64,000 bases of DNA, taken from assembly GCF_006345805.1 (NCBI RefSeq), contig NC_043024.1, positions 15,934,001-15,998,000 of the forward strand, written 5' to 3'. The stretch comes from Octopus sinensis (Eukaryota). The notes below the pieces were generated by a model. The model made no database searches and was not told the DNA's origin. It was given only the letters and a program-made list of their open reading frames with translations. The position numbers and the translations under genes were made by a program. Shown here piece by piece: positions 1 to 28,825 of the stretch (its first letter is position 1; the number at the start of each line of letters is the position of its first letter).

Positions 1-745
1 CTCTATCTCTGTCTTTTTCTCTGTCTTTTCGTTTGCATTTCCCTCTTACCCTCTTTCTCCTCCTACAGCCATAACTTCCTCTCTTTCTCTCTTACACTCC
101 CTCCTCTCCGTCCTGAACATGCTTCACTGCCCGTTCTTTCCTGTCTACTCTAACTATTCCTCTCTCCCTCACAACCTCATAACATTAGAGAGGTTAAACC
201 ACTTCCCGGGTAAGGTCTTCTCTCTGGTTACGCTTCGTTTCGTCTTTCCTGTGATCGTCGCCATGTCAAATTTAATTAACGCTATGTCCGAATTCTCATT
301 AATTCATTAAATTAGTACTTTTTTTCACTGGACCCAAAGGTAACCTGAATAGTGTGAACAGAGGGAAGTACAGATATTATGTAAGACAATGCGGTTGCTT
401 TACCTGTTGGAAATAGCAGCCAGGTTGCCCTCAAATCACTTCTTACTGTCTCTTAGAAAAGATGCATTTGACGGTGTATTTCTAGACGTATTATGTCAGA
501 AATACAGAATGGCTGGTCAAGCTGAAACATCCTTGATCGTAGGTCTGCTAGCTCAGGAGTGGCCTGGGGCTGAATAATCATATATTTTTATGTACTTTAT
601 AAAATAGAAATTAAAAATCAGTGGTGGCCTTTCTCCTATAAAAACCAACAATCACCTCAATGTGGTTTGGGGGCGAACCAGAAATTGGGAGAACGATGGC
701 AACGGTACTTGAATGACAATCTAAATAGTAACTTATATGATATAT

Positions 746-1055
746 GGAGGCGCAATGGCCCAGTGGTTAGGGCAGCGGACTCACGGTCCGAGGATCGCGG
801 TTTCGATTCCCAGACCGGGCGTTGTGTGTGTTTATTGAGCGAAAACACCTAAGGCTCTGCGAGATTCCGGCAGAGGGTGGTGGCGACCCCTGTTGTACTC
901 TTTCGCCCCAACTTTCTCTCACTCTCTCTTCCTGTTTCTTGAGTAACGCTGCGATGGACTGACGTCCCGTCCAGCTGGTGGTGGGGAATACATACGCCAT
1001 AGAAACCGGGACACCGGGCCTATGAGTCTGGCTAGGCTTGAAAAGGGCAATGAAA
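746..1055 (+). mobile_element. tRNA-derived SINE, family A
   Basis: A box TGGCCCAGTGG and B box GTTTCGATTCCC; same head recurs at 25390, 26217 and on the minus strand at about 56430 and 57720. Confidence 0.85.
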
Positions 1056-1084
1056 AAAACATCTTAAAAGTAAGAAATTTAAAT

Positions 1085-1945
1085 AGAAAAAAATTCCTGT
1101 TTTACAGAAAAAGAGTTTAAGAAAATATTCAAACTTCCAATTTTTCTGAAAAATATTATTGTTATACAGAAAAAGGTTTAATAAAATGTTGAGCATTCAA
1201 AATTTAGAAACTGGAATCGAAAAATAAATGAAATTTAATTGGCATTTTGTTGTCCTTTTTGAAATGCTCACCTCATTATCAAACATATCTTATTTCCAAA
1301 GTGGGGTGGAATACCACCTTTTTTTAACAAATGAAGATTAACTATATAATTTCTTTTGGAAGCATAGGAGAAGGATTTGATGGGATTAAGGACAGAAGGA
1401 GACGTTTAATCGAATAGAAGAGAGAAGCGAAAAAAGAGGGGAGGAGGAGGCAAGAAACATGAAACAATGGTAGGTCCAGGAAGAAGGAAAATGAGTTATT
1501 CGAAGAGGGAAGATGGTGGGAGGTGAATGATGAAATGAAGAGAGAAGGAAAAGAAGGAGGAAAAGAGAAAAAGATAAGAAGAAGAGAAAGAGAGAAGAAG
1601 AATAAAAGAGAGATAGGTCTGAGAAGAAGGATAATCACTCAGATAATGTCCCAGATAAAGAGAAAGGATTGTAAAATGGAATGGGGGAGAGAAAAGAAAG
1701 AGGAGGAAGTGAAGAGATTTTATTGTTAAAACTATTTTTTTTTCAAAAAGTGTAACAAGATGCCAATTAATTTTTTTTATTTTTTCGATTCTAGTTTCTA
1801 ACTTTTGAAGGCTCAAAATTTTATGAAACCTTTTTCTGTAAAACAACAATTTTCTTTTTTTCCTTTTTTTTTTTTTAGAAAAATTTAAAGTATGAACATT
1901 TTGTTAAACCCTTTTTTCTGTAAAACAGAACGTTTTTTTCCATTT
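1085..1945. repeat. Foldback-like element: degenerate inverted arms of about 190 bp around a purine-rich (GA) core
   Basis: 1085-1265 approximates the reverse complement of 1738-1945, with internal TTACAGAAAAAGGTTT subrepeats. Confidence 0.65.
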
Positions 1946-1947
1946 AG

Positions 1948-3310
1948 ATATTACAAATGATTTGGAGCAAACATCTGAAACAAGATATGGCGCTCAGACA
2001 TTGGCAATCAAAATGGATTACGCTGAAACTGCTCTGATGGTGACGATCTGAATTCTAATTCTTTTACATTTTAACAGTACACAAAGTTTTTCAAGGAATT
2101 GAAGTTCGTCTGAACAAAGTGGTAGATCTAACCGATTCTTTAAAAAACTTTCTGAAATCATATTGAGATAGGTATGAAGAGTTGGAACTGGATGCTAGGA
2201 ACGTGTGGAAATACAGACTCTAAAACAACAACAAATATAACAAGGAAGACAAACAGGCATGGAGTAAATCTAGCATCAGCCTCGGAGGGAGTTGTCCTTT
2301 CTTATTTCTTTACTGTCCACAAGAGGCTACACACAGAGGGGACAAACAAGTACACACAAACGGATTAAGTCAATTATATCGACCCCAGTGCGTAACCGGT
2401 ACTTAATTTATCGACCCCGAAAGGATGAAAGGCAAAGTCGACCTCGGCGGAATTTGAACTCAAAACGTAACGGCAGACGAAATACCGCTAAGCATTTCGC
2501 CCGGCGTGCTAACTTTTCTGCCAACTCGCCGCCTTTCTGCAAGAGAACAATGCAGATGCAGGACTTTCAATATCATTTTACATCAGTTTTTCATTCTCTT
2601 ACAAAATCACAGATGAGTTTATCGATCTGTGTACGACAAGCTCAAAGTAATACATGCAGATTTCAGAACTGAATCTGAGAAACTCATCCCCGTTTCCCTG
2701 TGATTTTAGTAATGCGTTCATAGAAGTAATTGTACAGCTTACAGCCTTTTGTTAACCCAGGACATATTTCACTTTATCTAAAGAGGCTCTTTTAATCCAT
2801 AATAAAAGGCTTGCTTATAACTTTCCAACTATTGATGTAACTCTTAAAATATATTTGAGCTTGATGGTTATTAGTTGTTCAGGAGAAAGGTTATTCGATA
2901 AACTGAGACTGATAAAGAATTGTCTGAGAACCAAAACGACTCATGAAAGACTAAGTATTCTGTGCCTTTTGAATGTAGAGAACCGTATTCTAAAAACGCG
3001 TATCTTGAGAAATTCATTAAAGATTTTTCTGATACAAAGTGCAGAAAGAAAGTCGCTTTTGTAGGTATCATAGTGTATAGTGGTAAGTTGATAAAACTTG
3101 TTGTACTTTGTTTAGATTGCAAACTTTGCACTGACTGATGCCTTTAAATTTTGTGTGTTAACTTGTCAATTTCAGTTATATGCAATAGACGGATAATGAG
3201 ATGTAAATTTGGTAATTTTACATGGATTTTAATATCTGAGTATGAATGACCCCCCCCCCACCACCGAATTTAAAGTGCTCTGGGCCCTACAAGATGTGAA
3301 CCCAGTCCTG
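1948..3310 (+). mobile_element. Degenerate hAT transposon, 3' part
   Basis: ISCSGERLFDKLRLIKNCLRTKTTHERLSILCLLNVE (hAT C-terminal dimerisation domain) at 2855-3064; further hAT-like decayed coding upstream; terminus ...GGGCCCTACAAGATGTGAACCCAGTCCTG. Confidence 0.8.
2298..2533 (-). mobile_element. tRNA-derived SINE, family B, nested in the hAT element
   Basis: Core GCCTTTCATCCTTTCGGGGTCGATAAATTAAGTACC (probably the Meta/Nin-type core) on the minus strand; near-identical copies at 27933, 44345, 52145, 53894, 55230. Confidence 0.88.
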
Positions 3311-3359
3311 CGCTCCACACATGCACAAATAGATAGATAGACAGACAGATAAATATAGG

Positions 3360-3395
<36 letters not shown>

Positions 3396-3865
3396 TAGAT
3401 AAGTTCCATTTGCTGTGAGGAACGAAGAATCCGCATGAAAACATTATAATTATGGTGCCTAATCTGGAGAAATAAAGGTCAGAATCAGAATCAGGACAAT
3501 TTTTTGACCCAGAAACAAGTCTTACTTAACTTGTATTTCTTTTGAACCTGAAATTTGTTGCACAGTGTTATTAAACTCTTCTATTAAATCTTGGACTGAG
3601 CAGAATGGTTCTCTTGCAGAGTTGAAATGCTCAAGAACACAACAGGCGACCCAGTCCGGGATTCGAACTCACAACCTCACGATCGTAAGCTCGACTCTCT
3701 AACGGATAAAAATTTCTTAGCTTCTCTTCCCAATTTTGCAATATTTCTTTATTACAAAAATATCATTAAACTTTATAACTTGTTGGTCGACATCTCGAAC
3801 AATTTCTTGCTCACAGGACAGAAGGTTCAAACTATTTCCAATTATTTTGATTCTATTCTCAACAG

Positions 3866-3980
3866 GATGATTTCCCTGGTTTAATTCCTCTCATACACAA
3901 ATATCTTGATTATAATTACGATACCGGTAGCAGACCTCAAAATATGAAATACCTGAAATATATTTCAGACAAAGCTGCAG
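3866..3980 (+). CDS. GCLC: GCLC-like paralog 1, penultimate exon (DDFPGLIPLIHKYLDYNYDTGSRPQNMKYLKYISDKAA-G)
   Basis: AACAG acceptor at 3861-3865; 115 nt (38 codons+1); matches human GCLC EGVFPGLIPILNSYL...YLKLIKKRAS/G; phase 1 joins the next exon; donor reads G|ATAAGA instead of G|GTAAG. Confidence 0.9.
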
Positions 3981-4520
3981 ATAAGATGATTCATTTGTTT
4001 CCGTCGACTCATCCACCTTCAGATAGTTTTGAAAGCCCATAGAAAATGCGAGCCTTTTACGTGAAAAACTGTGGATTTGTATAAAGGACACACAGACACA
4101 CAGATACACAAACATTTTGCCGTTTATAGATATAGAGATGTTGCTGCAAATACACAACATTTAATCTCTAATGATGCTAGTTTGTTCTTTTTAATTATAA
4201 AATATAATGTTAAACTATCTTTTAACCTTGTAACAACCATCGTTAATAAACCATCAAACTCCAAATACTACGTACTTATATGAAGAAAACTGTGTGTGTG
4301 TGTGATTCTATCACAGTTAAACCATTCTATCACAGTTTGGTTTTAAGCAATGTTTTCAAAACAGTTATCACAGCTAAAACGAATAAAGAAAAGAAACAAT
4401 TAGGGCTTTATCTGTTTTTGCCTCAGATCACGAAGTCAGGATATTGTTACAGAATACAGCAAATAATTTCCATATAAAATAAATAATAAACCTTTTTTTT
4501 TATTTTCATTTAATTTATAG

Positions 4521-4687
4521 GAAAGATAATGACAATGGCCCAATGGACAAGACAGTTTGTAACAAATCATGAAGATTACAAGAATGACTCTGTTGTCAGT
4601 GAGAGAATCGCTTATGATTTTATGATGGAATGTGAGAAGATTGTCAACAACGAAGAAGGATGTCCTCAAGCATTTATCAGGAGTTAA
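4521..4687 (+). CDS. GCLC: GCLC-like paralog 1, terminal exon (GKIMTMAQWTRQFVTNHEDYKNDSVVSERIAYDFMMECEKIVNNEEGCPQAFIRS*)
   Basis: TTTATAG acceptor; matches human GELMTVARWMREFIANHPDYKQDSVITDEMNY...C; TAA at 4685-4687; AATAAA at 4723-4728. Confidence 0.93.
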
Positions 4688-5116
4688 CAAAAACTACAAC
4701 AATTTCACTTTGTATTCAGTCGAATAAAATTATGCCAGTGCTTATTATTTTCTACCGGTAGCTTTTGTCAAACCGCTAAGTTACAAGGATATAAGCAAAC
4801 AAACTCCAGTTGTTAAGAGATGATGGGTACAAAGACAGACACAACGCTTTATAGGTGCGAAAACAATGGTCACTCTCTTACCGGCCATAACAAACGACCT
4901 TATATGTATGTGTATCAGGTATTATATCTATGTGTATATCAGGTATCAGGTGTTAACAAAAGCCATAATTTTGTTTAACTTATAAATAGGTAAAAAGAAA
5001 AACATGAAATCGGTACCAGAGGAATTTGAACTCAGAACGTAAGACGCTTAAAGAAATAACACTAAGAATTTCGCCCATGATTCTACTTTCTCACTGCTTT
5101 GTTGCTACTAAGCATG

Positions 5117-5445
5117 TGTGAAGGTGCGTGGCTTAGTGGTTATGGCATTCGGCTCACGATTGTAAAGTCGTGATTTCGATTCCCGGCGACGCGTTGTGGC
5201 CTTGAGCAAGACACTTTATTTCACATTGCTCCAGTCCACTCAGCTGGCAAAAATGAGTAGTACCTATATTTCGAAGGGCCAGCCTTGTCACACTCTGTGT
5301 CACGCTGAATCTCCCTGAGAACTACGTTAGGGGTACGCGTGTCTGTGGATTGCTCAGTCACTTGCACGTTAATTTCATGAGCAGGCTGTTCCGTTGATCG
5401 TATCAGCTGGGACCCTCGTCGTCGTAACCGACGGTGTGATCCTAA
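5117..5445 (+). mobile_element. tRNA-derived SINE, family D
   Basis: GTGAAGGTGCGTGGCTTAGTGG head and CCTTGAGCAAGACACTT central domain; paralog at 44920-45247. Confidence 0.85.
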
Positions 5446-5492
5446 CTAAGCATGTTGTCCGTCATATGCAATATATAATAAATGTCTATATA

Positions 5493-5619
5493 CAGGGTGA
5501 TTCAAAAGTCGCCATACATAAGAACAATTAATTTTTTTTATAAGAAACAGTTTTTTTAATTAACTGTTTCTTATAAAAAATAAATTTTTCCTATGTATGG
5601 TGACTTTTGAATCACCCTG
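5493..5619. mobile_element. Palindromic Tc1/mariner-type MITE
   Basis: CAGGGTGATTCAAAAGTCGCCATACATAG ... CTATGTATGGTGACTTTTGAATCACCCTG; almost fully self-complementary; TA on the left flank. Confidence 0.85.
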
Positions 5620-5625
5620 TGTATG

Positions 5626-5656
<31 letters not shown>

Positions 5657-5657
<1 letters not shown>

Positions 5658-5890
5658 GGCGTGGCTGTGTGGTAAGTAGCTTGCTTACGAACCACATGGT
5701 TCCGGGTTCAGTCCCGCTGCGTGGCACCTTGGGCAAGTGTTTTCTACTATAGCCTCGGGCCGACCAAAGTCTTGTGAGTGGATTTGGTAGATGGAAACTG
5801 AAAGAAGCCCGTCGTATATATGCATGTGTATGTATATGTTTGTGTGTCTGTGTTTGTCCCCCCAACATCGCTTGACAACCGATGCTTGTA
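5657..5890 (+). mobile_element. tRNA-derived CORE-like SINE, family C
   Basis: GGCGTGGCTGTGTGGTAAG head and GTGGCACCTTGGGCAAGTG core; copies at 17900, 26655, 27665, 42090(-), 61480. Confidence 0.85.
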
Positions 5891-6327
5891 AACCGTAACC
5901 CTCCCCCTTTCGGAGAAGGGGCTTTGGTTATTGTTTCAAAATTGAATTGTGTCCTTGTTTGGGGAAATTGACAATATTTTTACCGTCTTTACGGAAGCAT
6001 TTTTGTTAAAATGCCTTCCATAGAAGAAAGTCAAAAAATGAATTTCGCTGCAGCCGTACACTTCTATACAAGATCCAATTGATCGAAATTGCAAGAGATG
6101 GGCCTACAATTCCAGTCTGTTAGATATTTTGAGTATTGTTATCACTAGCGATATCAAAATATAACTTTGTATTTTGTATTTTATGTGTAGATGTATATAT
6201 ATATATATATATATAGATGTACATGTAATATGTACACATATATATACACACATATATACATGCATAATATATCTACCCATACACACACACACACACACAT
6301 ACATAGGGGCAGGTGTGGCTGTGTGGT

Positions 6328-7647
6328 AACAAACTACGTTCGAAGATACTGTACTTGATATGGGCGGTAGTGCCTTGCCGGTTTATGGCCTACCTTCAAC
6401 AAACCGGGAAGGCACAAATACTCTGTCTTCACATTTGCTGCGTGAGACATGTTTCAATGTTGACGAGCTTGCCGAGTACATAGCCGACAATGAGCCAAAG
6501 CTCCTTCCAGAACACAAGTTCGCTTACAACTCCGTTGTTAATTCAGTCCAGGCCAAAACTGGGAGGATTTTTTTTCCTGGACGCTCCTGGGGGCACTGGG
6601 AAAACTTTTGTCAACAAATTAATATTGGCTGGGATTAGGCGAACACAAGGCATTGCCCTAGCTGTGGAATCATCTGGAATTGCGGCTACTTTGTTGCCAG
6701 GCGGCAGGACAGCTCACTCCACTTTCAAGCTTCCGCTTCACTTAGCGAAGACTGAGACACCAACTTGCAACATCAGTAACAGCTCCGATCAGGCAGAAGT
6801 CTTCAGACGATGCAAGCTTATCGTTTGGGATGAATGCCCGATGGCCCACAGACGTGCTCTTGAAGCACTAAATAGATCTCTCAGAGACATCAAACACTCT
6901 TCACCTCCGATGGGAGGCATAACACTTCTTCTTTCAGGGGACTTCCGACAAACACTTCCCGTTATTCCCAAAGGGACTACAGCTGATGCAGTAAGTGCGT
7001 GTCTTAAGTCATCCACATTGTGGCCACTGGTGAAGACTCTCAAACTTCACACCAATATGCGTGCTCATATGCGATGTAATATCACATCAGCTGCATTTCC
7101 TCACACCCTCCTTGCACTTGGCGAAGGCAAAATACCAGGGGATGAAAATGGTAATATTGCCATCGATTCCATTTGTACCATTGTTAAAACGCCTTCTGAT
7201 CTCAGAGATGCAGTGTTCCCAGATCTACAAGCTAATTATCAGAATATGGATTGGATTGGCCAAAGGGCTATTCTGGCCCCGAGGAATAAAACTGTTCACC
7301 ATATGAAATGCTAAAACTCATTCTTGGGGAAGTCTATGTATATCAGTCTATCGATACAACTCCTGACCCAGAGGACGTCATCAACTATCCAATAGAGGTA
7401 CTCAATTCCTTTGAGCACCCCGGACTACCACCACACATTCTCAAACTTAAAGTTGGTGCCCCTATAATGCTCATCAGAAATTTGGTTCCCCCAAAACAAT
7501 GCAATGGCACACGTTTGATCGTTAAGTCCTTATCTCCCACCGTAAACTTATATCAATATTTGCCTGAATAATCATCATAATTCAGTGCAATCATTAACAG
7601 TACTTTCAAGCAATTCAGCCCCGAGCATCGCCGGGCAATTCTGCTAG
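6328..7647 (+). mobile_element. Helitron fragment with PIF1-type helicase (frameshifted, internally deleted) and intact 3' terminus
   Basis: ORFs 6490-7314 (DAPGGTGKT, IVWDECPM, GDFRQTLP) and 7308-7571 (LKVGAPIMLIRN...CNGTRL); GC hairpin at 7617-7636 then CTAG|T at 7644-7648. Confidence 0.93.
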
Positions 7648-7666
7648 TTATATATATATATGTATA

Positions 7667-8175
7667 TGATCTCCCTTTGCAGGCTAGCAAGGACACCGTG
7701 ATGGTGTCGGCTCTTCTAGTGACGTCGATAGTCGCCTGGGGCTAAATGCATCAGTAATACCCCCACCACCCCGCCCTGTCCCTAGCCACATTCAGATGGC
7801 TGATCCCGCTTATATTATAGAGCAGTTACTGTTTATACCTCGCTCAGAGATTTATTATTGTCTTCGAACAGATTTTCTACGCCAGTGACTGTAGTTACTG
7901 TGAAAATCTATATATATCTAGCCTGTACAGGAAGTCCCTCAACGAAGAACGGTGCTTGCCATGCGCTGACAAGAGGCAATTACCTCGAAACCGGTCCGTG
8001 TGTAGCATCCGTATCTTCGGGGAGGCTGATCTCCCTTTGCAGGCTAGCAAGGACACCGTGATGGTTTCGGCTCTTCTGATGACGTCGATAGTCGCCTGGG
8101 GCTAAATGCATCAGTAACACCCCCACCACCCCGCCCTGTCCCTAGCCACATTCAGATGGCTGATCCCGCTTATAT

Positions 8176-8179
<4 letters not shown>
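7667..8179 (+). repeat. Penelope-type pseudo-LTR remnant: 153-bp direct repeat (offset 360) around a hammerhead-like motif
   Basis: 7667-7819 repeats at 8027-8179; shares CAGTTACTGTTTATACCTCGCTCAGAGATTTATTATTG with 49134-49540. Confidence 0.7.
7960..8002 (+). ncRNA. Minimal type I hammerhead ribozyme with a G8->A core mutation
   Basis: CATGCG-CTGACAA-GAGG(caatta)CCTC-GAAAC-CG-GTC-CGTGTG: stems I and II pair, palindromic stem III ACCGGT. Confidence 0.75.
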
Positions 8180-8207
<28 letters not shown>

Positions 8208-8315
8208 CATACATATTATATATATACATATATACATATATATATATATACATATTATATATATACATATATATATATATACATATTACATATATACATA
8301 TATATATATATATAC

Positions 8316-8364
<49 letters not shown>

Positions 8365-8559
8365 TATATATATATATATACATGTTACTCTTTTACTTGT
8401 TTCAGTCATGTGACTGTGGCCATGCTGGAGCACCGCCTTTAGTCGAGCAAATCGACCCCAGGACTTATTCTTTGTAAGCCTAGTACTTATTCTATCGGTC
8501 TCTTTTGCCGAACCGCTAAGTTACGGCATCAGTTGTCAAGCGATGGGGGAGGGGGCAAA

Positions 8560-9740
8560 CACAACACACAAACATATATGCTAAAATGGAAATAACAATG
8601 GGGCATGTTCGGTATATCTTGCTTTATGATTTCAATAAAGGCAACAACGCGACGGAAAGTGCGAGGAATATTAATGCAATATATGGGGGTCGGACAATAA
8701 ACGTAAGCCAGTGTCAACGGCTGTACCAGAAATTCTGAGCCAGAAGCTGCAACCTAGAAATGAACCTTGAACTGGAAGATCTGTAGAGCTCGACGAGGAT
8801 GTCTCGCAAAACCTGGTGGAACAAAATCCCACCGTAACTATTGAGGAACAAGCACAGAAACTTGAATTTGGTCGGTCAACCATGCATCGACACCTGGATG
8901 CCATTGGTAAAGCCAGCAAATTGAGTCAGTGGATTTGTCACAAACTTTCTGAGTCTAATCGCATGGAGAGAGTGAATATGTGCTCTTCTTTATTGTCACG
9001 TCTCAAGAACGAACCTTGTTTGGACCGAATAGTGATTGGTGACGTGAAACGAATTCTCTATAAAAATGTCACGGTGGGTAGGGAAAGGAGAAACACCGGC
9101 ACCGCAGGCTAATGAAGGTCTTCACTCACGTAAGTTGTTGTTATCTGTTTGATGGGATATGAACAGTTTCGTCCAATTTGAACTTTTAAACCCGAACCAA
9201 ACGATAACACTGGAGATCTTCTGCGAGCAGCTTGGGCGGCTTAAGACACTACTAGAAGGAAAACAAATAACCAGCTTTGGTTTCAAGATGAGAGGTGTTC
9301 TTCCATCAGGATAATGCTTGGATACATACAGCGAGGATGACACCGCAAAGGCGGGAGCAGTTTGAATGGGAAACGATGTCCCACCCTTCATATTCACTGG
9401 ACTTTGCCCTAACTGATTATCATTTATTCCACAGTCTTCAAAATCATTTTATTTTTTATTTTATTTTATCTAGTTTCAGCTCACGAGCTGTGGCCATGCT
9501 GGGGCACCGCCATTTGGACAGAAAAAAATATAAATTCTGTAGACGAAGTCAGAACAGTAGCAGAGGAGTATTTTTCATCATGGACAACTGAATTTTGGAA
9601 GAGGGACCTTGCAAGTTTACCAGATAGATAGAAGAGCATTGTAGAAAATGAAGGAGATTAAAAAAGAAAGTTCTTAATCTTAATTTTAACAAATAAAAAA
9701 GTATTTAAAGACCAAATTATCTATAGGATGACCCATTATA
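8560..9740 (+). mobile_element. Degenerate mariner transposon interrupted by a SINE/LINE tail
   Basis: MEITMGHVRYILLYDF N-terminus, WICHKLSE (WVPHEL), FHQDNAWIH, HPSYSLDFALTDYHLF (YSPDL) motifs. Confidence 0.9.
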
Positions 9741-9754
9741 TATATGTGTGTCTG

Positions 9755-9797
<43 letters not shown>

Positions 9798-10499
9798 AAA
9801 TAAATGGAGTTTAACACAGGTGTTAAATCAAATATTTTTACTTTCGACACATGTTTCGAAAATTCCACTGATACTATTCAAAAAAATAAATGGTATAAAA
9901 CTCAACTTGTGTGTCTCTGTGTTTAACTTCCCGGCACATCTCCTCCTAGCCAACAAATCGTTGAACCACCAAAAATGGGTCACTTAAAGTTTTGGCGAAT
10001 GAAAATTGAACTGCGCTATTTCTGTTCCGAAATTCATCTCGCACGTGCAAAAATTGATAATGTGTTTGTTTAGGCCTTATCCCATGCATTGAATAGTGAA
10101 CTTTACTCAGTCAGCTGTTTGACGTGAACTGTGTTCACCACGCGTGCAAGCATACGTAAATTGCATAAAAAATAAAAAATCAAGATATAAAAACGAATCG
10201 CCGTAAACATTGTAGAAATTCTGCAAAGAAATGAATTTTCGGGATGTAGCCTGAAGGGTTTTTTCGTATTAATCGTTTGGTCTTTGTGAACAATTGTTTT
10301 CATAACATTTTTAACGCTTTGAATTAAATGTGGCCATTTTGCGTTTGAATCACTTTAACCAAATTTTAGCAGGCCGGATTTTTGATCATCATGATACATC
10401 GCCAGCGACTCCTTGAAACTCTCCCCTGAAATCCCCGTTGAGAAATACTGATCTAAAAGAATAATTCAACAATGCAATTATTTGATCAGCAAAAATTTA

Positions 10500-10779
<280 letters not shown>

Positions 10780-11354
10780 ATCAAAATAATCAACAAGAAT
10801 ATCCAGAGGTAATGCAGTGCGATCGTTTCAAGCAACTCCATTTAATTGACCAATACAATAATTTTTGTGTGACTTCAATCGTAAGAAGATATAACAATAA
10901 TGTCAACATTGCGTTGATAGCACGTGTTTTTAATCATTTAATAAGCGAAAAAATTACCAAAAAAAAAAGATTACCAACACATTTTGTTGTTTTAAGCATT
11001 CAATATGCATTTAAAGTGAAAAAGTAAAACGGTAAACAACCCATTTTGTAGTTTCCAGAGTAGAAAAAAGAAACTGTAAAAAAATTAAATATGTCATAAA
11101 CAAATAAAATATTTCGTAAACAATGCATGCGAGCACAGAGACAGCAATTTAGCGACCTTTATGTCAGACAGATAGAAGTTGTCATTTGGCATGATACGGC
11201 AACATAATTTTTTTTTTCTGGGATCTTTTCAATCTGCGAAGTTTCAAGGTGTTTAGTTTTAAAAAATTAATTCAAAAATCTGGTCATCATATTGAAAAGA
11301 ATCCAGAAGGATCTTTCCCAGAATCGTTAGCACACCTTGCAAAATACTGGGATC

Positions 11355-14300
11355 TGTTATTTTATTACCCATTAAGGGCCAACATAGAGGGGACAATACA
11401 GCATGATCGGGGTCACACATAAACGAATGATACAATAAAACTTTACATGAGTAATGAAAACGAATGGGTTACAATACAATAAATAACAACAGTAAATAAC
11501 AAACAATAATTACAAACAACAGGTTACAAACAATAATATACACGGTGAGATGTTAAAAACGGGTATGCTCCGACCCCGCGAGCCCTGTCTTAAAGACACC
11601 GATCTACTGTAAGTCACACTAGCGTGTTCACGCAGCGCCTTTCACTCCCAAAATGCGTGCTACACGCGTCCATCGTTTTCTAAACTCACTCTGTGACAAA
11701 CACCTCCTTTCCAGCCCCACCTTCCTTTTCAAATGAAAAGCGAACATATTCACGAGGGCGAGGCCGGAGACGCAGGTGTGTATCACTATACCTTTCATTC
11801 TCGACTTCCATATCACCTCTCTCATAATTGCTACTATCACGAGAAAGAAATTCTTACCTTCTTCCGTTGGGAGATGCAGCGGGTTAATTTTTACAATTGG
11901 GCAAGACGGAAAGACGGAAAGACGGAACACGATGACCGATGCGATAAACACATTGGCCACATCTGCCCTCCCTTTCAAGAATAGCCACCGCCAAGACCAG
12001 GTCCTGACTATGCTGGCCACCTTGCTGGAGACCTCAGCCCAGTTCTTTTCTATCTGGAGATCTGGGCCAACCCAAATTCCTAGCAACTTAATCGGGCCCT
12101 CCGTCCAACGTCCTACGATGCTATTCGAAGGCATCGACTTGCCCCTCCAGGTGCCGAGTTGCAAGCCGACCGACTTTTCCCGGTTAACTTTTGCTCCTGC
12201 CACCGTCTCGTAAACCTTAATGGTTTCATCTACTTGCTGCAGATGTCCCATCTTGATCTCGATGATAGTGATGTCGTCCGCGTAGGCTGTAACCGATCCT
12301 CCACCTCCTGGATTCATCGGGATGCCGTTCAGCTTTCTCAGTAATGGCTCTAGGGGCATCACGTACAAAAGCACAGGGAGCGGACACCCTTGGCGAACCA
12401 AACGTTTGATGCAGAACGGCTTTGATAAAAAGCCGTTCACCCGAACGACCAAGTCGATGTTATCGTACACCTAACTATATGATCCACCTGAGAAAACCAA
12501 AACCCAGTCCGAACCGCGCGAGAACAGAAACCAGGTATCGAATGCTTTAGCTTGGTCTAAATGGACCAGTGCCCCGCCCTTGCCAGCTTTTTTGCCATAC
12601 CCTTCTACAGTGTAGCGTATAAGATGAAGATTATCCTGGATGGTTCTGCCGGGGACAGCACACGTTTGAGCCCCTCCAATTAGGCCATCCGTGACACGCG
12701 TCAATCTTTTTGCTAACACTTTGGCCAAAATCATCTCTGCGTTCAGCAGAGTGATGGGCCTAAAATTATCTATATTATCCCCCTTGTCTGAGTCCTTCCT
12801 GACCAGCGTCACAACTCCCCGGTGTACAGATCTGGAGATAAGCCCATTCTGCTGCCAGTTTGTGTAAACGCTAGCCAGTATGTTCCCAAACAAATCTGGC
12901 ATACTTTTATACAGCTCGTAGGGAAGACCATCGAGACCCGGCGCCTTACCACCACCGCAGTCTGCTATGGCCTCAATAATTTCCCTAGTTGTGATCGACC
13001 CTTCACAGCTCTCCGTATCCTGCCCCGAGAGAGCGGCAGGCCGGCGAGGAAGTCCGTAAGGTCCATCCTGCAATCCGGCCCATCGCTTCCCCCGAAAAGC
13101 TGGGCGAAGTGTTCTGGATAGGTCCGACACATCTCCTCGGGTTTGTTTATCAAATCACCTTGCGCATTCACCACAGATCGAATTATGGAATCATTTCCAT
13201 GTTGAGCTTCCACAACCCGTGCCCATCCAGCGGCCTTGATTCCCTCGCTCCAGATTGCACGAAGTCTAGATCTGACTATACACCCCATGTGTTTGGCTTC
13301 GAGGTGCTGGTTTAATTCCAGTCTCTTCACTTTCACCTGGGATGCGTCGCAAGATAACATGGCTTCCTCTAGGGCCTTAACTAATTCTTTTTCTTCCTTA
13401 CGCCCTCTAGCCACTAATCTTATGCTATATCTAATAGACTCAAATTTAATTGCTCTTTTGAGGGCGTACCACCATTTGTTGTTGATAATGAAACCGGTTA
13501 ACACCCTCTGTATTAGTACCTTGATCCGGCTCCTGTACTCCTCAATCGCCAAAAGGGACTTATTTAGTTTCCAGTAGCTGGAACCCTTACTATATATCCT
13601 ATCTAGATTCAGTTTACATGTTACCAACTTGTGGTCACTGTAACTGACCAAGTGGAATTGTGGACGCGTAACTATTTCTTTATCTAATTTTATAATAAAT
13701 ATCCTATCTATGTAAGACCTAAATGACCCGTCGCTATTTGACCATGTCCACAATGGAGCGTTCGGGAATTCTATTCTGTAGGGATTTACTAGCTGAAAGT
13801 GACTTAGTAGATCCTGGAAACCTATGTTCGGTTTTCAATTGGGATTCGAACCGACACTATCTACGCGCGCATCGAGAATAGTGTTGAAGTCTCCTAACAC
13901 AACTAGTGAACGTGACGTGCCTAGAAACTTCTCCAAATCTCGGTAATAATCAGTCTGACTTGAACTAGGTGCATAAACTGCAACCAGCCTGATTTCCTTA
14001 CCACTGAACGTCAAATCTAAAACGACCAGCCTACCTTCTGGATCAGAAAAATCAACTTTTTCTCTGAAACTTGGTTTCTTTTAATTAGGACCAACACCCC
14101 ACTCCGCCACCTGGTAGGCCTGGAGAAGCGAACCTCTCGTAACCATTCAGGAGCGGAGAGCAGATCTCTTGGCCCTTTTAATCAAGTTTCAGTAGCAACA
14201 ATGACATTGTGCCCTGACGTCATTTAGGAAACGTCCTAGTTTCCAGCTCGACGCCAGGCCACGCACATTTATACATCCTACGTGAACAATCATTTAAATG

Positions 14301-16010
14301 ACTTACCTCAGTCGGTGTCTGGAGGCGGAGGGTTATCCGCTTTCTCTTTTTTTCCGGGCTCGCGGTGTCGGGATGATGAGGCCATCATATATATCTCGGT
14401 AATGTCATGTCTGAGAGGGCCTACATCATTTCGAAACTCACTCTGTAACCTGTTATAATTTTTTGGGTCAGTCTTAAAAATAGAAAACCCATCCATACCT
14501 TCAGTTTCTATTTTGGGGGCATGAATTACTGCCACGGGCTTCGCTAGATCTCGATTCGAGCTGCGAACCGCCATGAAATAGTCTTCTACCTCACTTTTCC
14601 TTGGCCTTTTTTTTTACTTGTCATTTTTTTTCTCTTTTTCCTTCTCGGAAAATTTTTCTCTCATGGTTCACCGCTTCCCACCCCTCGCCTGCCTTTGCCT
14701 CTGGTATTGATGTCTGTTCCTTCGGTTTTGCTGTGTTTTCTTCTGTTTCATTTGTCTTTTTCTGATTCCTTGGTCTTGCAGTCCGACCTGAGGTGGCCCT
14801 TTTTTCCACACTGGAAGCATCGAGGTTGGCGACCCTTCACCACGACCACTAATCGGGTCTCACCAACCTCGATAATTTCTGTTATTTCTTCCAGTTTTGC
14901 TCAGTCTGCATAATAATACGAAGGCTCTATCCAAACCAATTACGTGGCTCCATCGCGGCAGCTTCCACTATGCTTATTTTTTTTCTTCCAAACCCATAGT
15001 GACTGCCGCGACGAGCCACTCGGGGTCCACCTCAGGGAGAATATTACTTCTAGTCACTCTCGGTGTTCTTCTGCCCATATATATATACTGGTAGAAGTAC
15101 CAACTCCTCAGTCATTAGTGGGTCGACTGAATAAAGTCGTGGTGCCTTTTCGTACCCCATTCTTACTTCCACGGCGGCATACCAATTTCTTAATTGTCTA
15201 CCGGGGGCCAAACATAGAAATGGACAGAACTGATGGGATCAGTAAAGCGATATGGCTTTACATATAATGTGACTTTAAAAATTTTAATAAAATATTAAAA
15301 AATCGAATGAAATTAACAATACAAAGACAATACAAATGAAGCGATGATCAGACCACGCTCCGACCCCGATCTATCACTGGTACCGTTTTTGCCGGGATTT
15401 TTTTGTTCTTTTTCCACGGCGGCATAGCGCCTACCTCGATTGACCTATTTGACCAAATGCCATATCGGCTTCAAACATTTTTCTATTTCGCTTTCAATTA
15501 CATAATCTATTTTTTTCTTTTACTTTATACATTTTATGGGTGATGGTCTTTTTTTCAATGTCTTGTTGTATTCTTTTGGATGGGCCACTTTAATTTCGTT
15601 CCCCTCCTTTTTTAAAAGTTCTTTGTGTTTTCCTAGGTTATCCACGTTATTCAATTTTACTTTAGTTCCTGCTGCTGCAGCAAAGTCTAATTTTTTTGTT
15701 TTTTTTCTTTTCATTTTTTTTTCATAACTTTCTCCGCTGTATTTAAACTTTCGACTTCAATATTTTTTTCTTGATGTTGATGGTCTCGGTGAGTAAATAT
15801 CCGTTGCGTCTTCAATAAGCACCTTTTCACAAATCTCCTCTTCACTTGTTACTTGTTCACTGTTGGGTTTTCTTGAGCTTGCCATAATGCAAGCCTCCCC
15901 ACACAAATAAAGTTTTCCCAAAAATTGCACTTCAATAATACTATCGCGCTCACCTCCTCGTAAACAACCGCAATAATTCAACAATAATTAACACAACTCG
16001 CACGCGCTGG
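11355..16010 (-). mobile_element. Near full-length Tx1/L1-clade LINE (ORF1 with CCHC knuckle; ORF2 with AP endonuclease and RT), inactivated
   Basis: ORF2 starts at 14293 (MIVHVGCINVRGL), with GDFN, YIDRIF, SDHKLV, KAPGLDG, FRPITLLN, DQAKAFD, QGCPL and YADD motifs; ORF1 has CFQCGKKGHLRSDC near 14800; stops and frameshifts present. Confidence 0.93.
15182..15411 (-). mobile_element. 5'-truncated Tx1-like LINE tail nested in ORF1
   Basis: 15-bp direct repeat TTCCACGGCGGCATA at 15167-15181 and 15412-15426; content resembles the LINE 3' UTR (GGGGTCGGAGC...CTATGTTTGGCCC). Confidence 0.8.
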
Positions 16011-16149
16011 TTAGACTTGGGATCGATTCGCCGGACAAGGATTTTGGATTATTTTTTCCTGCCTCTTTACTTAATTTTTGAGAGCGGTCAGGTTCAATTC
16101 TAGTATTCCTATTTGTGAGAGTAATTGAGTTTATTTCAGATATTCTCAT

Positions 16150-17790
16150 TTAAAAAAATCATCTCCAGCTAAATCGTGGTGAAATGGTAGAAGGAAAGTG
16201 TAAGAGCGGAGAGTACTGGATTGAGTTTGTTATTGTATTTGAAAATTGTAGTTGTTGAACCTGTTGAATTTATATTGTTATCGAAATTCCTTTCTACCCA
16301 TTGTCGGGGATGGAAGCGGGAAGCTACGCTGCGGCAGCGGAAAAAAGCCTGTCTGCCGACACGGTGAGCATGAGGGAAGTTGAAATTAACAAGGAGTTGA
16401 AAAAATATAATACATTATTTAAGAAGGAAGGAGACTGCCTCCGGTTGACACCGCCAGCAGAAGCAGTGCAGAAAGCAGAAAAATAAAAAAATATTTACTG
16501 GACTCTTAACATAGAGTCTAAAAAGTGGAAATAGCCAACACAGAAGAAACTGAAGAGGCGTTAAATGCTATCAAGGATGTGGCCACATTTTACACACGTG
16601 GAAGGAAGTTCGGTAGAGTGGAGGTGCGCTTCGGGAGTAAGGAGGAAGCAAAAAGTACTCCACTGTACTTTTAAGAACTGCAAAGTGAGCACTCTTGCCT
16701 ACCTATTGCAGAAAACGTGCTGCAAGAGTGAGAATAGGGAGAGTGCCCCCGGAGATAGACGAGGCGTGGTTGGTGGTGGCCATTCTCTTCAATTGCGAGG
16801 AGGAGGTTGAGATAATTAAGGTGGAGAGGTCGAGAGAGATCAATTGGTGGAGGTGTGGACTCGAAGTCCTACTTCATATTTCCCTACCAGATCTCCACAT
16901 TATAGTAGAAGAGTTGGTACTCCCCGGTGAGACCTAACTGAGAGTTATGGCGGAAGGGAGGCGCCCAATTTGTTACAACTGTAGGAATAGGGGACACATG
17001 CAAGCAAGGTGTCCCCATAAAAAAGACCGAATACAAACAGAAGTGGAGGAGGTAGCTGTGGAAGAGTCGAAGGTGGAAACAGCGATTGATAGAAAGTGTG
17101 CAAGGATGGAGTCGGCACCAAAAAACAAGAAAAAAAAGAAAGGATGAAGAAGAGTAATGTAGTTGAGGAGGAGGGTTATGGAGAGAGTCGAACCACGGAA
17201 CCAGAGATGTTAATAAGTTATGAGAATGAGGAAACAATTTTACTGGTGGAATATATAGGAGAGAGACAGAGGACAAAGGAAAGGGTGGATGAACTTGACA
17301 GAAGAGACTTGAAAGTAATGATTGCGTATATACAGAATGAAGAGATTGATAAAAAAAAGTTTAAAAAATAAAGAATAAAACCTGGGTGATAATGGGTGAG
17401 AAGTGGTATAGCAAGGACTCAAGAACATTACTAGTGGCAAACAGAAAAGCAGAGATGTTATTGGAATTGTTCGATAAGAAAATAAAAAATACAGAAATGT
17501 ACTTCGAGTACAAAGTCATGCCGAAAACCGTAAAATTCGATGATTTGGTGGCAACACAGATCGATTTTTTTTTTAAAAAGGATGAATTACAATGATACAT
17601 ACATGAACATAAGAACAGTAAAATGGAACTGCGAGCTTGGGGTGGGGTGGGGCTCATAAGCCATTACATTTTTTTTTTCATTCGATTTTATTGTCATACA
17701 CATTTTCATTTATTCGTTTTATGTACCCCACGTTTTGTGTTGTCCGTCTTTGTAATGTCCCCTCTTTTTTAGGCTAATAAAGATAAAACG
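16150..17790 (+). mobile_element. ORF1-only (HAL1-like) non-autonomous Tx1 derivative
   Basis: Decayed ORF1 homologous to the neighbouring LINE ORF1 (TRGRKFGRVEVRF, RVRIGRVPPEIDEAWL, CYNCRNRGHMQARC), followed directly by a LINE-type tail (GTCCCCTCT...GCTAATAAAG); no ORF2. Confidence 0.75.
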
Positions 17791-18268
17791 ACGTTGGTAT
17801 TGCCTTGGCGGAGGTTTGCGCTCTCTGAGTGCTCTTGCTTATATGTGAATCGTTTTGGTTCCTAATGAACCCGCCCAGTTATTCAATATCTAAAAAGTCG
17901 TATGGCTGTGTGGCAAGAACCCTGCTTCTCAACCATATAGTTCTGAGTTCAGTCGCACTGCGTGGCACCTTGGGCAAGTGTCTTCTACTATAGCCTAGGG
18001 CCGATTAAATCCTTGTGAGTGGATTTGGTAGACGGAAACTGAAAGAAGCCCGTCGTATATATATATACGCGTCTGACCACTGTCCGAAGTCAGGACGCCA
18101 TGATAGATCGTTAGCTCCTACACGCATTTTTTTCTCTCCTTGTTTCTCTCCTTGTTTTTTCCGTGTATCTTTCTGTCGAAGAGCGTAGGCTCGAAACGTA
18201 AAATACTTTTTCTATTCCTGAGCGCTATACTAATACATTTATTTGTTTGTACTCCACCTGCCTTCATC

Positions 18269-18636
18269 TGGTCATTTTGCCAGTTTAGCCAATAAAACAC
18301 ACGCACTATATATATTTGTTGTTACTGTGCTTCAGCGTTATTTATTTTTTACATTAATCTTAATCTTATTTCCGCCAGAGTTCTTTCGTCACACTCCTGT
18401 GACCGCATCAGTGGTCCTTTGTTTTCTTCTTTCTTATTTGTGTGTCTCTCCTTACTAATGGTCAGCCATTTTGTATTTTGTATTCCTAGGACCACTGATG
18501 AGGTCACAGGAGTGTGACGAAAGAACTCTGGCCGAAATAAGATTAAGATTAATGTAAAAAATAAATAACGCTGAAGCAAAGTAACACCAAATATGTAGTG
18601 CGTGTGTTTTTATTGGCTAAACTGGCAAAATGACCA
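18269..18636. repeat. 150-bp inverted repeat carrying mirrored hammerhead-like motifs (Penelope remnant)
   Basis: 18269-18419 is approximately the reverse complement of 18487-18636; core CTGATGA-G-GTCAC(aggagt)GTGAC-GAAAG-AA-CTC at 18495-18528. Confidence 0.8.
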
Positions 18637-18728
18637 TTCCTAAATACAACACTATGTTTCAACACACGATTTCACATGAAAAAATCTTGCAAAAGAAATA
18701 TATAAACGTATATATATATATATCTCGC

Positions 18729-18985
18729 GAAGGACCTGAGAGACCTGCATGAGGTGGGTGTAGGTGTCTTCAAAATAAAGCTGGACCTCTTCCTGTCAGC
18801 TGTCCCAGATGAACCAACTTCGCGGCAGGAGGTGCAGATGAGGGCAGCTGCATCAAACTCTCTCATGCACCAAATATCAATTCCTAAAAAGCATTCGTGA
18901 AGTAAAATTATGTAGCAACATCAAATGGCGGTGCCCCACCATGGCCGCAGCTCGTGAGCTGAAACTAGATAAAATAAAAATAAAG
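18729..18985 (+). mobile_element. 3' fragment of a CR1/L2-like LINE
   Basis: KDLRDLHEVGVGVFKIKLDLFLSAVPDEP C-terminal coding; tail GGCGGTGCCCCACCATGGCCGCAGCTCGTGAGCTGAAACTAG then A-rich. Confidence 0.7.
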
Positions 18986-19224
18986 AAATTATATTTATGA
19001 CGAGCTTCTTTCGGTTTCCATCTACCGAAGTTACGCACCAAGTTTTGGTCATCCCGAGGCTATAGCGAAAGACACTTGTCCAAGGGGCCACTCAGGGTCA
19101 ATCTAGAATGACGTGGACGGGAAATTTCTTACTACAGAGCCACGACCGCGCCTATATTGTCCAGATATTTTAACAGCAAAATCTTATACGAACCCCTCAA
19201 CGGTCACTAGTCTATATTATTGAA

Positions 19225-19630
19225 GGATCTTTTCGGTTTGACCGGCAGTTTTTTTTAAATAATTTCCACGTAACTAAACACTTTTAAACTTCGTATACTG
19301 GTAGAATGTGTTTATAAAACATCTTTTTCTCTTGGCTTTCTTGAGAAAATTCTATGGTTTGTTAGATATTTGTTGTCTTCAATTTCTGCAATTTCAACCA
19401 ATCACTGACGTCTATTGAGATGAAAACATTCTGTGCCGTATGAATATGATTGGGTTTATTTATATTTCTGAAGAAAAAAGATACCCTTCCCCCACCCCTA
19501 ACCCTAACTAACCCTAACTCTAACCCTAAAACAGATTGAAATGCAATAGATCGATACTAGGGTCATAATTATGGGTGACAATTTCACATGACACTGCTAG
19601 AAAAAACTGCCGTTCAAACCGAAAAGATCT
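19225..19630. mobile_element. Non-autonomous DNA transposon (MITE) with about 30-bp TIRs, 8-bp TSD and internal (CCCTAA)-like repeats
   Basis: GGATCTTTTCGGTTTGACCGGCAGTTTTTT / AAAAAACTGCCGTTCAAACCGAAAAGATCT; TTATTGAA at 19217-19224 and 19631-19638. Confidence 0.85.
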
Positions 19631-23930: not shown

Positions 23931-24067
23931 AACATAGATCTGGCCATCAAATTGAAAAGATCCCGATTCTGCCAGTTCGCTGCCTTCAGATAGGAAAATA
24001 ATGATTTGTATTTTCCTCCTCCTTCTCCGTTTGACCGGCTACACCAGCACGGCCCCATTCATACTCG

Positions 24068-26831: not shown

Positions 26832-26914
<83 letters not shown>

Positions 26915-28789: not shown

Positions 28790-28825
<36 letters not shown>

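What the first reader, a model, noticed from the sequence alone, without database searches (positions are those of the whole stretch)
3866..4687. Second GCLC-like gene upstream: a tandem array of a normally single-copy gene
Seen: the final two GCLC exons with stop codon and AATAAA lie 27 kb upstream of, and on the same strand as, the start of another GCLC-like gene, so they cannot belong to it. This copy is also divergent (HPDYK->HEDYK, VDTRCSI->TGSRPQN, short C-terminus). Established: GCLC is usually single-copy in bilaterians. Inference: a lineage-specific expanded cluster that may extend beyond both window edges.
Basis: partly seen in the sequence, partly recalled or inferred. Interest (0 to 1): 0.72.

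Follow-up and report, generated by a model that had tools for sequence, protein, structure and literature searches.

The report
Octopus GCLC-like tandem gene cluster
The segment is the real 3' end of a second, separate, already annotated copy of the glutathione-synthesis enzyme gene GCLC, one of four neighbouring and six chromosome-linked divergent copies that octopuses carry besides the normal gene, and whose function nobody has described.

Summary
The window is 100% identical to Octopus sinensis chromosome CM016886.1:15,934,001-15,998,000. Window 3866-3980 and 4521-4687 are coding exons 15 and 16 (of 16) of the RefSeq gene for XP_036370512.1 ("GCLC-like", here gene B), and AATAAA sits at 4723-4728. 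The gene starting at 32085 is a different paralog (XP_029652730.2, gene C). C's own last exons are only about 87% identical to B's, so this is not a haplotig or misassembly. The cluster runs A>B>C><D and extends past both window edges. Two further paralogs lie on the same chromosome, and the canonical GCLC is elsewhere. O. vulgaris has the same order, O. bimaculoides has at least four paralogs, and Argonauta has one.

The paralogs form their own clade and are under purifying selection (dN/dS about 0.3). They keep the metal, ATP and glutamate ligands. They have changed about half of the positions that are invariant in animal GCLC, including Cys553, and they lack the C-terminal tail.

New here: in the O. 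sinensis reference the last intron of B starts with AT instead of GT, whereas all relatives have GT. No paper found describes the expansion. Function is inferred, not shown.

The parts
1..3865 (+). 3' part of intron 14 of GCLC-like gene B (XP_036370512.1). Exon 14 lies about 2 kb left of the window start.
   Evidence: Exact exon map of P0006 on L003. L003 position 62588 equals window position 1. No GCLC-like coding match in 1-3865.
3866..3980 (+). Coding exon 15 of gene B (aa 514-551 plus the first base of codon 552). It carries TGSRPQN where canonical GCLC has VDTRC(S/T).
   Evidence: Acceptor AG at 3864-3865.
3981..4520 (+). Intron 15, the last intron (phase 1), with the non-canonical boundaries AT...AG. 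The donor dinucleotide AT is at 3981-3982 (CM016886.1:15,937,981).
   Evidence: this is the only non-GT-AG junction of 15. In alignment A1, the O. vulgaris ortholog and all five other copies aligned read GCAG|GTAAGA or GCAG|GTGAGA, while the window reads GCAG|ATAAGA.
4521..4687 (+). Coding exon 16 of gene B (aa 552-606) and stop codon TAA at 4685-4687.
   Evidence: 100% identical to the C-terminus of P0006.
4723..4728 (+). AATAAA poly(A) signal, 36 bases after the stop.
   Evidence: It is the only such hexamer in 4688-5200.
4320..4692 (+). Probable gene-conversion tract shared with upstream neighbour gene A. It covers the last 200 bases of intron 15 plus exon 16.
   Evidence: 94.9% DNA identity to L003 4832-5198 (gene A), including intron sequence. 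By contrast, exon 15 is 66% and exons 1-14 are 73% identical at protein level.
4729..32084 (.). 27-kb intergenic spacer between genes B and C. It is filled with repeats and transposon remnants.
   Evidence: PIF1-helicase ORF at 6490-7314 (+), E=2e-59. Reverse-transcriptase ORFs at 11628-13130 (-). (TA)n arrays. No tRNA and no Rfam match.
32085..62007 (+). Coding exons 1-12 of GCLC-like gene C (XP_029652730.2). Exon coordinates: 32085-32234, 37419-37525, 38960-39067, 40117-40182, 41221-41337, 43952-44010, 48394-48611, 52005-52121, 55850-55988, 56826-56935, 59264-59350, 61903-62007. Exons 13-16 lie at window-equivalent 64165-68012, outside the window.
   Evidence: Exact exon map of P0004 on L004, all junctions GT-AG. 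tblastn.

Best explanation
Window 3866-4687 is the true 3' end (coding exons 15 and 16, stop, then a poly(A) signal) of Octopus sinensis gene B, which encodes XP_036370512.1. B is the second gene of a cluster of divergent GCLC paralogs on chromosome CM016886.1:
- A: + strand, ends at 15,876,606.
- B: + strand, 15,881,414-15,938,687.
- C: + strand, 15,966,085-16,002,015.
- D: - strand, 16,013,489-16,081,824.

The cluster arose by DNA-level duplication of a whole intron-containing gene; the four O. sinensis paralogs that were mapped (B, C, D, F) each have 16 coding exons. The founder paralog split from the canonical GCLC before octopuses and argonauts diverged. It then multiplied to six orthogroups in Octopus.

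Shown: gene identity, cluster layout, conservation in other species, purifying selection, and retention of the catalytic ligands.

Inferred: the proteins are still Mg-ATP-dependent gamma-glutamyl ligases. Their control, and possibly their substrate pocket, has changed. They have no Cys553 (a regulatory, 4-hydroxynonenal-modified residue) and no C-terminal tail. The glutamate-site Tyr is Phe, Met245 is Leu, and His370 is Tyr.

In the O. sinensis reference only, the donor of B's last intron is AT instead of GT. This is either a real allele that weakens splicing or a base error.
For: - Window identity: 100% identical to CM016886.1.
- Gene model: the exon map of P0006 has 16 exons and translates exactly.
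- Neighbours and positions.
- Census: six O. sinensis and O. vulgaris paralogs plus canonical P0016 on another chromosome.
- Tree: NJ, 200 bootstraps. The octopod paralog clade including Argonauta P0008 has 91% support, and each of the six orthogroups has 100%.
- Family match: Pfam GCS E=2e-136. Colinear match to yeast GCL 3IG5 over residues 6-596, E=1e-88.
- Catalytic residues kept in B: D49, E50, E52, E96, E103, Q251, R296, K412, E425, R427 in human numbering. Their roles are taken from PMC5613772.
- Selection among paralogs: dN/dS 0.27-0.32.
- Ortholog check: the O. vulgaris ortholog of B has all 16 exons intact and 15 GT-AG introns. It shows 8 synonymous against 3 non-synonymous differences.
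- Not an assembly duplicate: the last exons of C and D are only 87% identical to those of B.
Against: - No expression or enzyme data could be reached. The only transcript-type record found is QHX41528.1, for a different paralog (group E); that it is cDNA-derived is my assumption.
- The AT donor could make the reference allele of B non-functional.
- About half of the positions invariant in animal GCLC are changed: 99 of 191. These include the glutamate-contacting Tyr (yeast Y362) and Met (yeast M262), so classical glutamate-cysteine ligase activity is not assured.
- Group F has even lost R296.
- The tree is distance-based only, and the placement of the clade's root is not strongly tested.
Confidence: 0.88

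Rival explanations
1. Gene B in the sequenced O. sinensis animal is a freshly disabled or weakened allele. The G>A change at +1 of the last intron's donor blocks normal splicing. Read-through then gives a 571-aa protein ending ...DKAADKMIHLFPSTHPPSDSFESP*, without the last 55 residues of the GCS domain. This is compatible with the main explanation for the gene as a whole.
For: AT at 3981-3982, where the O. vulgaris ortholog (99.5% identical locally) and all other paralog copies have GT. The read-through stop is at 4040-4042. The only in-frame cryptic GT donors are poor ones, at exon ends 3926 and 4025. The Pfam domain runs to residue 592, so the lost part belongs to the fold.
Against: RefSeq still models the AT-AG junction without marking the protein as low quality (name). 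From general knowledge of the pipeline, this usually needs spliced transcript support. It is a single base in one assembly, so it could be a polishing error or one haplotype. The rest of the gene is intact.
Confidence: 0.3
2. The upstream exons are an assembly artefact (haplotig or misassembled duplicate) of the downstream gene's own last exons.
For: There is a 100-N gap in the window (45804-45903), and the region is rich in repeats.
Against: The downstream gene's own exons 15-16 exist 2-4 kb beyond the window and are only 87% identical in DNA. The two proteins differ at about a quarter of residues. The O. vulgaris chromosome assembly, made independently, shows genes A and B adjacent in the same way.
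Confidence: 0.01
3. The two exons are an orphan relic, a truncated pseudogene copy without upstream exons, like the dispersed 5-exon fragment P0001/P0003.
For: No further GCLC exon is found in window 1-3865. Truncated, frameshifted copies of this family do exist elsewhere (L001 and L002).
Against: Exons 1-14 lie upstream on the same strand with GT-AG junctions, and together they give an uninterrupted 606-codon frame. That frame is conserved in O. vulgaris with mostly synonymous differences.
Confidence: 0.01
4. The paralogs no longer work as ligases. They serve another role, for example as abundant structural proteins (as glutathione S-transferase copies became cephalopod lens S-crystallins) or as decoys for the modifier subunit.
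For: 99 of 191 animal-invariant positions are changed, and the stem branch is long. Group F lost R296, R328 and W406. Recruitment of duplicated enzymes as S-crystallins is documented in cephalopods (PMC13218726).
Against: All metal, phosphate and glutamate-binding acidic and basic residues are kept in groups A-E across species that split long ago. This is hard to explain without catalysis. dN/dS of about 0.3 indicates continuing constraint.
Confidence: 0.12

Closest known systems
Canonical animal GCLC (glutamate-cysteine ligase catalytic subunit; in octopods P0016 and P0018)
   Same: Same Pfam family (GCS, PF03074), and colinear over the whole length. The catalytic Glu, Gln, Arg and Lys residues are the same. 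The last exon is still about 73% identical to the octopod canonical one. The human gene also has 16 exons, but that is from memory and was not tested here.
   Different: Only 46-48% identical overall, and it forms a separate clade. 99 of 191 animal-invariant columns are changed, including M245, C249, Y329 (in most groups), H370, the FENIQSTNWQ motif, R423 and C553. It has a 3-residue deletion before GW(R/K) and lacks the roughly 30-residue C-terminal tail. It is multi-copy and clustered rather than single-copy.
Saccharomyces cerevisiae Gsh1 / GCL (PDB 3IG5, 3IG8, 3LVV, 3LVW)
   Same: This is the only solved relative. It aligns with residues 6-596 of B at E=1e-88, and the active-site motifs WGDExEY, PEYxxYMxEG, LQVTFQ and EFRxME are shared.
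   Different: Yeast M262 and Y362 (glutamate pocket; mapping) are Leu and Phe in B. The yeast enzyme works without a modifier subunit. Whether B does the same is unknown.
Cephalopod S-crystallins (expanded glutathione S-transferase copies)
   Same: An enzyme of glutathione chemistry that has multiplied in a cephalopod lineage into clustered, divergent copies (PMC13218726).
   Different: An unrelated protein family. For S-crystallins, loss of activity and lens expression are documented. For the GCLC-like genes, neither expression site nor activity is known. This is an analogy only.

Membership tests
Eukaryotic glutamate-cysteine ligase family (Pfam GCS PF03074; yeast Gsh1 / animal GCLC type) | GCS domain above the curated threshold | tested here: met
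   P0006: 455 bits against a cut-off of 25, profile positions 1-372 of 372. The 93 aa encoded by the two exons alone: 90 bits.
Eukaryotic glutamate-cysteine ligase family (Pfam GCS PF03074; yeast Gsh1 / animal GCLC type) | Colinear full-length similarity to a solved GCL | tested here: met
   3IG5 chain A, E=1e-88, query residues 6-596.
Eukaryotic glutamate-cysteine ligase family (Pfam GCS PF03074; yeast Gsh1 / animal GCLC type) | Metal-, ATP- and glutamate-binding residues (human D49, E50, E52, E96, E103, Q251, R296, K412, E425, R427) | tested here: met
   All are present in gene B and in groups A, C, D and E. Group F lacks R296. Residue roles are from PMC5613772.
Eukaryotic glutamate-cysteine ligase family (Pfam GCS PF03074; yeast Gsh1 / animal GCLC type) | [quoted passage not shown] | not testable with these tools
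   Needs the recombinant enzyme.
Canonical (orthologous) animal GCLC | Groups with the canonical GCLC of its own lineage in a tree | tested here: not met
   It forms a separate octopod-only clade with 91% bootstrap support. The canonical O. sinensis and Argonauta proteins group together elsewhere. The canonical gene is on another chromosome.
Canonical (orthologous) animal GCLC | Keeps the positions invariant across animal GCLC | tested here: not met
   Only 92 of 191 columns that are at least 97% invariant in 101 canonical sequences are kept in all nine full-length paralogs.
Canonical (orthologous) animal GCLC | Regulatory Cys553 (VDTRC) and the C-terminal tail | tested here: not met
   Cys553 is Pro in B (Arg in A) and the tail is absent. 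Cys553 is a modified regulatory residue according to PMC6875399.
Canonical (orthologous) animal GCLC | Forms a holoenzyme with the modifier subunit GCLM | not testable with these tools
   Needs co-expression and binding assays.
Tandem gene array | Adjacent paralogs on one chromosome, same strand | tested here: met
   A, B and C lie head-to-tail on the + strand. D is adjacent but inverted.
Tandem gene array | The copies are distinct loci, not assembly duplicates | tested here: met
   B and C are 87% identical in DNA at the last exons. dS between B and C is 0.50. The A-B adjacency is also seen in O. vulgaris.
Pseudogene | Disrupted reading frame or lost splice signals | tested here: inconclusive
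   The frame is intact over all 16 exons. However, one donor is AT in the O. sinensis reference only, and the O. vulgaris ortholog is fully intact.

The most novel reading that the evidence does not exclude
Octopods own a private, six-member subfamily of GCLC-derived ligases. These keep the catalytic machinery, escape the usual redox and modifier-subunit control (no Cys553, no tail), and have a rebuilt glutamate/cysteine pocket (Met245, Tyr329, Cys249 and His370 changed). They would then make gamma-glutamyl products other than, or in amounts and places different from, ordinary gamma-glutamylcysteine. That would be a new branch of thiol or gamma-glutamyl metabolism specific to octopuses.
Probability: 0.25. 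Interest if true: 0.65.

Novelty: new variant of a known kind. Interest (0 to 1): 0.42.

Why it matters
GCLC catalyses the rate-limiting step of glutathione synthesis. From general knowledge, it is almost always a single gene in animals; the homolog list is in line with that but is not a count. Octopuses carry six extra, clustered and selectively maintained copies. These have intact catalytic residues but changed regulatory and pocket residues. That makes them a natural experiment in how a tightly controlled housekeeping enzyme can be duplicated and rewired.

If the copies prove active, they could reveal modifier-independent or substrate-shifted gamma-glutamyl ligases. If inactive, they would be a second case, after S-crystallins, of a glutathione-pathway enzyme recruited to another role in cephalopods.

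The gene models are already in RefSeq and GenBank. What is new is the recognition and description of the family, not the sequences themselves.

Tried and rejected
- The first protein search, with the 93-aa peptide, returned only three short fragments and missed the true gene. The word index limits it, so it was a misleading start. At first it suggested an orphan fragment similar to P0001/P0003.
- A search of window 1-3865 for upstream exons found none. This is explained by the 5.85-kb intron 14.
- The haplotig and orphan-relic readings were tested and rejected.
- A Biopython bootstrap tree timed out. It was replaced by a numpy-based NJ tree.
- The look-up of P0010 found no locus; isoform P0129 was used instead.
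- tRNA and Rfam scans of the window found nothing.
- Pfam scans of 15 other ORFs gave only transposon-type hits (PIF1 helicase, reverse transcriptase, a weak Mos1 HTH) or nothing.
- Six literature searches found no paper on a GCLC expansion in octopus or other cephalopods. This includes a 2026 comparative analysis of expanded cephalopod families. One further search failed on syntax.
- The search of 1.84 billion representatives showed no intermediate relatives, but it carries no names. It therefore cannot prove that squids and cuttlefish lack the clade.

Full report
**1. What is at the coordinates.**
Translation of window 3866 onward gives DDFPGLIPLIHKYLDYNYDTGSRPQNMKYLKYISDKAA. Translation from 4521 gives (G)KIMTMAQWTRQFVTNHEDYKNDSVVSERIAYDFMMECEKIVNNEEGCPQAFIRS followed by TAA at 4685-4687. 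AATAAA lies at 4723-4728. The joined 93 residues match the end of the Pfam GCS profile (positions 294-372 of 372) with E=2e-25. A tblastn with a mammalian GCLC sequence and with octopus fragments found these two exons and a second gene, whose exons run from 32085 to 62007 on the same strand. It found no GCLC exon in 1-3865.

**2. Where the window comes from and which gene this is.**
A protein search with the downstream gene's exons returned a set of octopod "GCLC-like" proteins. One of them, P0006 (XP_036370512.1, Octopus sinensis, 606 aa), ends with exactly the 93 residues of the finding. Fetching its locus showed that the window is 100% identical to O. sinensis chromosome CM016886.1:15,934,001-15,998,000.

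An exact protein-to-genome map shows 16 coding exons for P0006. Window 3866-3980 is exon 15 and 4521-4684 is exon 16. Exon 14 lies 5.85 kb upstream, about 2 kb left of the window edge, which explains why nothing was seen in 1-3865. The downstream gene is P0004 (XP_029652730.2). Its exons 1-12 are in the window and exons 13-16 are at window-equivalent 64165-68012.

**3.
The downstream gene's own exons 15 and 16 are only 87.7% and 87.3% identical in DNA to the finding. The two proteins are 74% identical over exons 1-14, and the synonymous divergence is 0.50. In the independently assembled O. vulgaris chromosome OX597840.1, the ortholog of B again follows the ortholog of A. A, C and D there carry the accessions CAI9741796, CAI9741798 and CAI9741799; that B is the missing number is my inference. 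A haplotig or misassembly is excluded.

**4. The cluster.**
On CM016886.1 the layout is as follows:

| Gene | Protein | Strand | Position |
|---|---|---|---|
| A | P0132, XP_029652761.2 | + | ends at 15,876,606 |
| B | P0006 | + | 15,881,414-15,938,687 |
| C | P0004 | + | 15,966,085-16,002,015 |
| D | P0133, XP_036370436.1 | - | 16,013,489-16,081,824 (convergent with C) |
| F | P0129 | - | 12.18-12.22 Mb |
| E | fragments P0126, P0127 | not determined | same chromosome |

- E is the ortholog of the O. vulgaris GenBank protein record QHX41528.1.
- The canonical GCLC (P0016, 649 aa) is on a different, 165-Mb chromosome.
- A truncated copy (exons 12-16; P0001 and P0003) lies elsewhere and is frameshifted.

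**5. Evolution.**
- A neighbour-joining tree (Kimura protein distances, 200 bootstraps) puts all octopod GCLC-like proteins, including the single Argonauta hians one (P0008), in one clade with 91% support. The clade sits on a long stem next to the cephalopod canonical GCLCs.
- Six Octopus orthogroups each have 100% support. Four of them contain an O. bimaculoides member. No annotated O. bimaculoides ortholog was retrieved for A or B.
- In a library of 1.84 billion representatives clustered at 50% identity, the clade collapses to one representative, and the next best protein is 46% identical. The clade is therefore isolated.
- The four O. sinensis paralogs mapped have 16 coding exons each, so duplication was at the DNA level.
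- Pairwise Nei-Gojobori dN/dS among O. sinensis paralogs is 0.27-0.32.
- The O. vulgaris ortholog of B is intact in all 16 exons with GT-AG throughout. It differs at 11 of 1818 coding bases, 8 of them synonymous. These values indicate maintained protein-coding function.

**6. What the protein probably does.**
B matches Pfam GCS over the whole domain (E=2e-136). It aligns colinearly with the solved yeast enzyme 3IG5 (E=1e-88). Residue roles were taken from PMC5613772 and mapped through the yeast alignment.

The residues that bind metal, phosphate and glutamate are all kept in B. In human numbering these are D49, E50, E52, E96, E103, Q251, R296, K412, E425 and R427.

Yet of 191 alignment columns that are at least 97% invariant in 101 canonical animal GCLCs, only 92 are kept in all nine full-length paralogs. 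Changes in B include:
- M245L (yeast M262, glutamate pocket)
- C249S
- Y329F (yeast Y362, which hydrogen-bonds the glutamate carboxylate)
- H370Y
- FENIQSTNWQ changed to IQTIIGSNWH
- R423K
- a 3-residue deletion before GW(R/K)
- C553P
- loss of the roughly 30-residue tail

Cys553 is a documented regulatory residue, the one modified by 4-hydroxynonenal (PMC6875399). Its proposed role in the disulfide with the modifier subunit is from my memory of Tu and Anders 1998 and was not checked.

My inference is a still-catalytic gamma-glutamyl ligase with altered regulation and possibly altered substrate handling. Group F, which has also lost R296, R328 and W406, may no longer bind glutamate. None of this is shown experimentally.

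**7.
The last intron of B begins with AT (3981-3982) instead of GT. It is the only non-canonical junction of the gene. The O. vulgaris ortholog, 99.5% identical across this 1.1 kb, and all other copies aligned have GT.
- If the base is real and splicing fails, read-through ends at a stop at 4040-4042 and removes the last 55 residues.
- Only two weak in-frame cryptic donors exist.
- RefSeq nevertheless models the AT-AG junction.
- Intron-15 read-through forms are annotated for other paralogs (P0010, P0007).
- Whether this is an error, a heterozygous variant or a tolerated odd intron cannot be decided here.

**8. Also seen.**
The last 200 bases of intron 15 plus exon 16 of B (4320-4692) are 94.9% identical to the same part of neighbour A, although A is the most distant Octopus paralog elsewhere (66-73% protein identity). 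The similarity stops 5 bases after the stop codon. Synonymous divergence in the last two exons is also far lower than in exons 1-14: 0.17 against 0.57 for B compared with C. This looks like gene conversion between cluster members.

**9. Known or new.**
The gene models are public (RefSeq, GenBank) and named "GCLC-like". Six full-text searches, and a 2026 comparative paper on expanded cephalopod gene families, gave no mention of a GCLC expansion. I therefore rate the sequences as known, and the family as an undescribed, divergent variant of a known enzyme kind.

**10. Verdict.**
The finding is real and the tandem-array reading is supported. The specific segment is an ordinary gene 3' end. The wider family is moderately interesting. 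Interest score: 0.42.

Noticed in passing
window 3981-3982 (CM016886.1:15,937,981): The donor of the last intron of gene B reads AT instead of GT. The O. vulgaris ortholog and all other paralog copies aligned have GT. Read-through would stop at 4040-4042.
   Followed up: yes
window 4320-4692 compared with L003 4832-5198: A 373-base tract (end of intron 15 plus exon 16) is 95% identical between neighbours A and B, which are otherwise about 73% identical as proteins. This is probably gene conversion within the cluster.
   Followed up: partly
L001 10001-13751 (O. vulgaris OX597822.1, 9.5-13 kb from the chromosome end); L002 7686-11403 (O. sinensis unplaced contig): A dispersed truncated copy of the family (exons 12-16 only, closest to group E) is annotated as protein-coding (P0001, P0003). 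It carries a 1-base deletion in exon 15 in O. sinensis and a frameshift in exon 16 in O. vulgaris, so it is probably a pseudogene.
   Followed up: partly
L007 (O. sinensis CM016886.1:12.18-12.22 Mb), protein P0129; O. bimaculoides P0138: Paralog group F has lost R296, R328, W406 and Y97, residues that are invariant in animal GCLC and include a glutamate-binding arginine. It may no longer be a ligase. Its first intron is GC-AG.
   Followed up: partly
window 6490-7314 (+): A 274-aa ORF with a PIF1-like helicase domain (E=2e-59) lies in the spacer between genes B and C. It is probably a Helitron-type transposon remnant. Window 7036-7648 is 92% identical to part of an unplaced O. sinensis contig (L002 458-1062).
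   Followed up: partly
window 11628-13753 (-): Broken reverse-transcriptase ORFs (RVT_1) lie in a GC-richer block, a retroelement remnant in the spacer.
   Followed up: partly
window 45804-45903: A 100-N assembly gap lies inside a long (TA)n array in intron 6 of gene C.
   Followed up: yes
window 34099-35418 (intron 1 of gene C): A 1.3-kb element has a 99.6% identical inverted copy about 38 kb downstream (L004 50206-51528). It overlaps a 389-aa ORF (33830-34999, minus strand) that has no Pfam match. It may be a recently active unknown mobile element.
   Followed up: no
window 53940-54307; also about 3640-3690 (-) and about 5000-5040: There are tRNA-like SINE sequences: a 184-base unit repeated twice in tandem, and T-arm-like GGTTCGAA motifs elsewhere. 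ARAGORN and Rfam call no real tRNA.
   Followed up: partly
window 52763-53353 (+): An ORF with a weak Mos1-transposase HTH match (E=3e-4, below the Pfam cut-off) lies in intron 8 of gene C. It is probably a mariner-type remnant.
   Followed up: no
L006 56316/62123 (gene D, O. sinensis): One junction of the RefSeq model for gene D could not be placed on GT-AG by my exact mapping; it came out as AA..GG. This may be a model or assembly problem in that gene.
   Followed up: no
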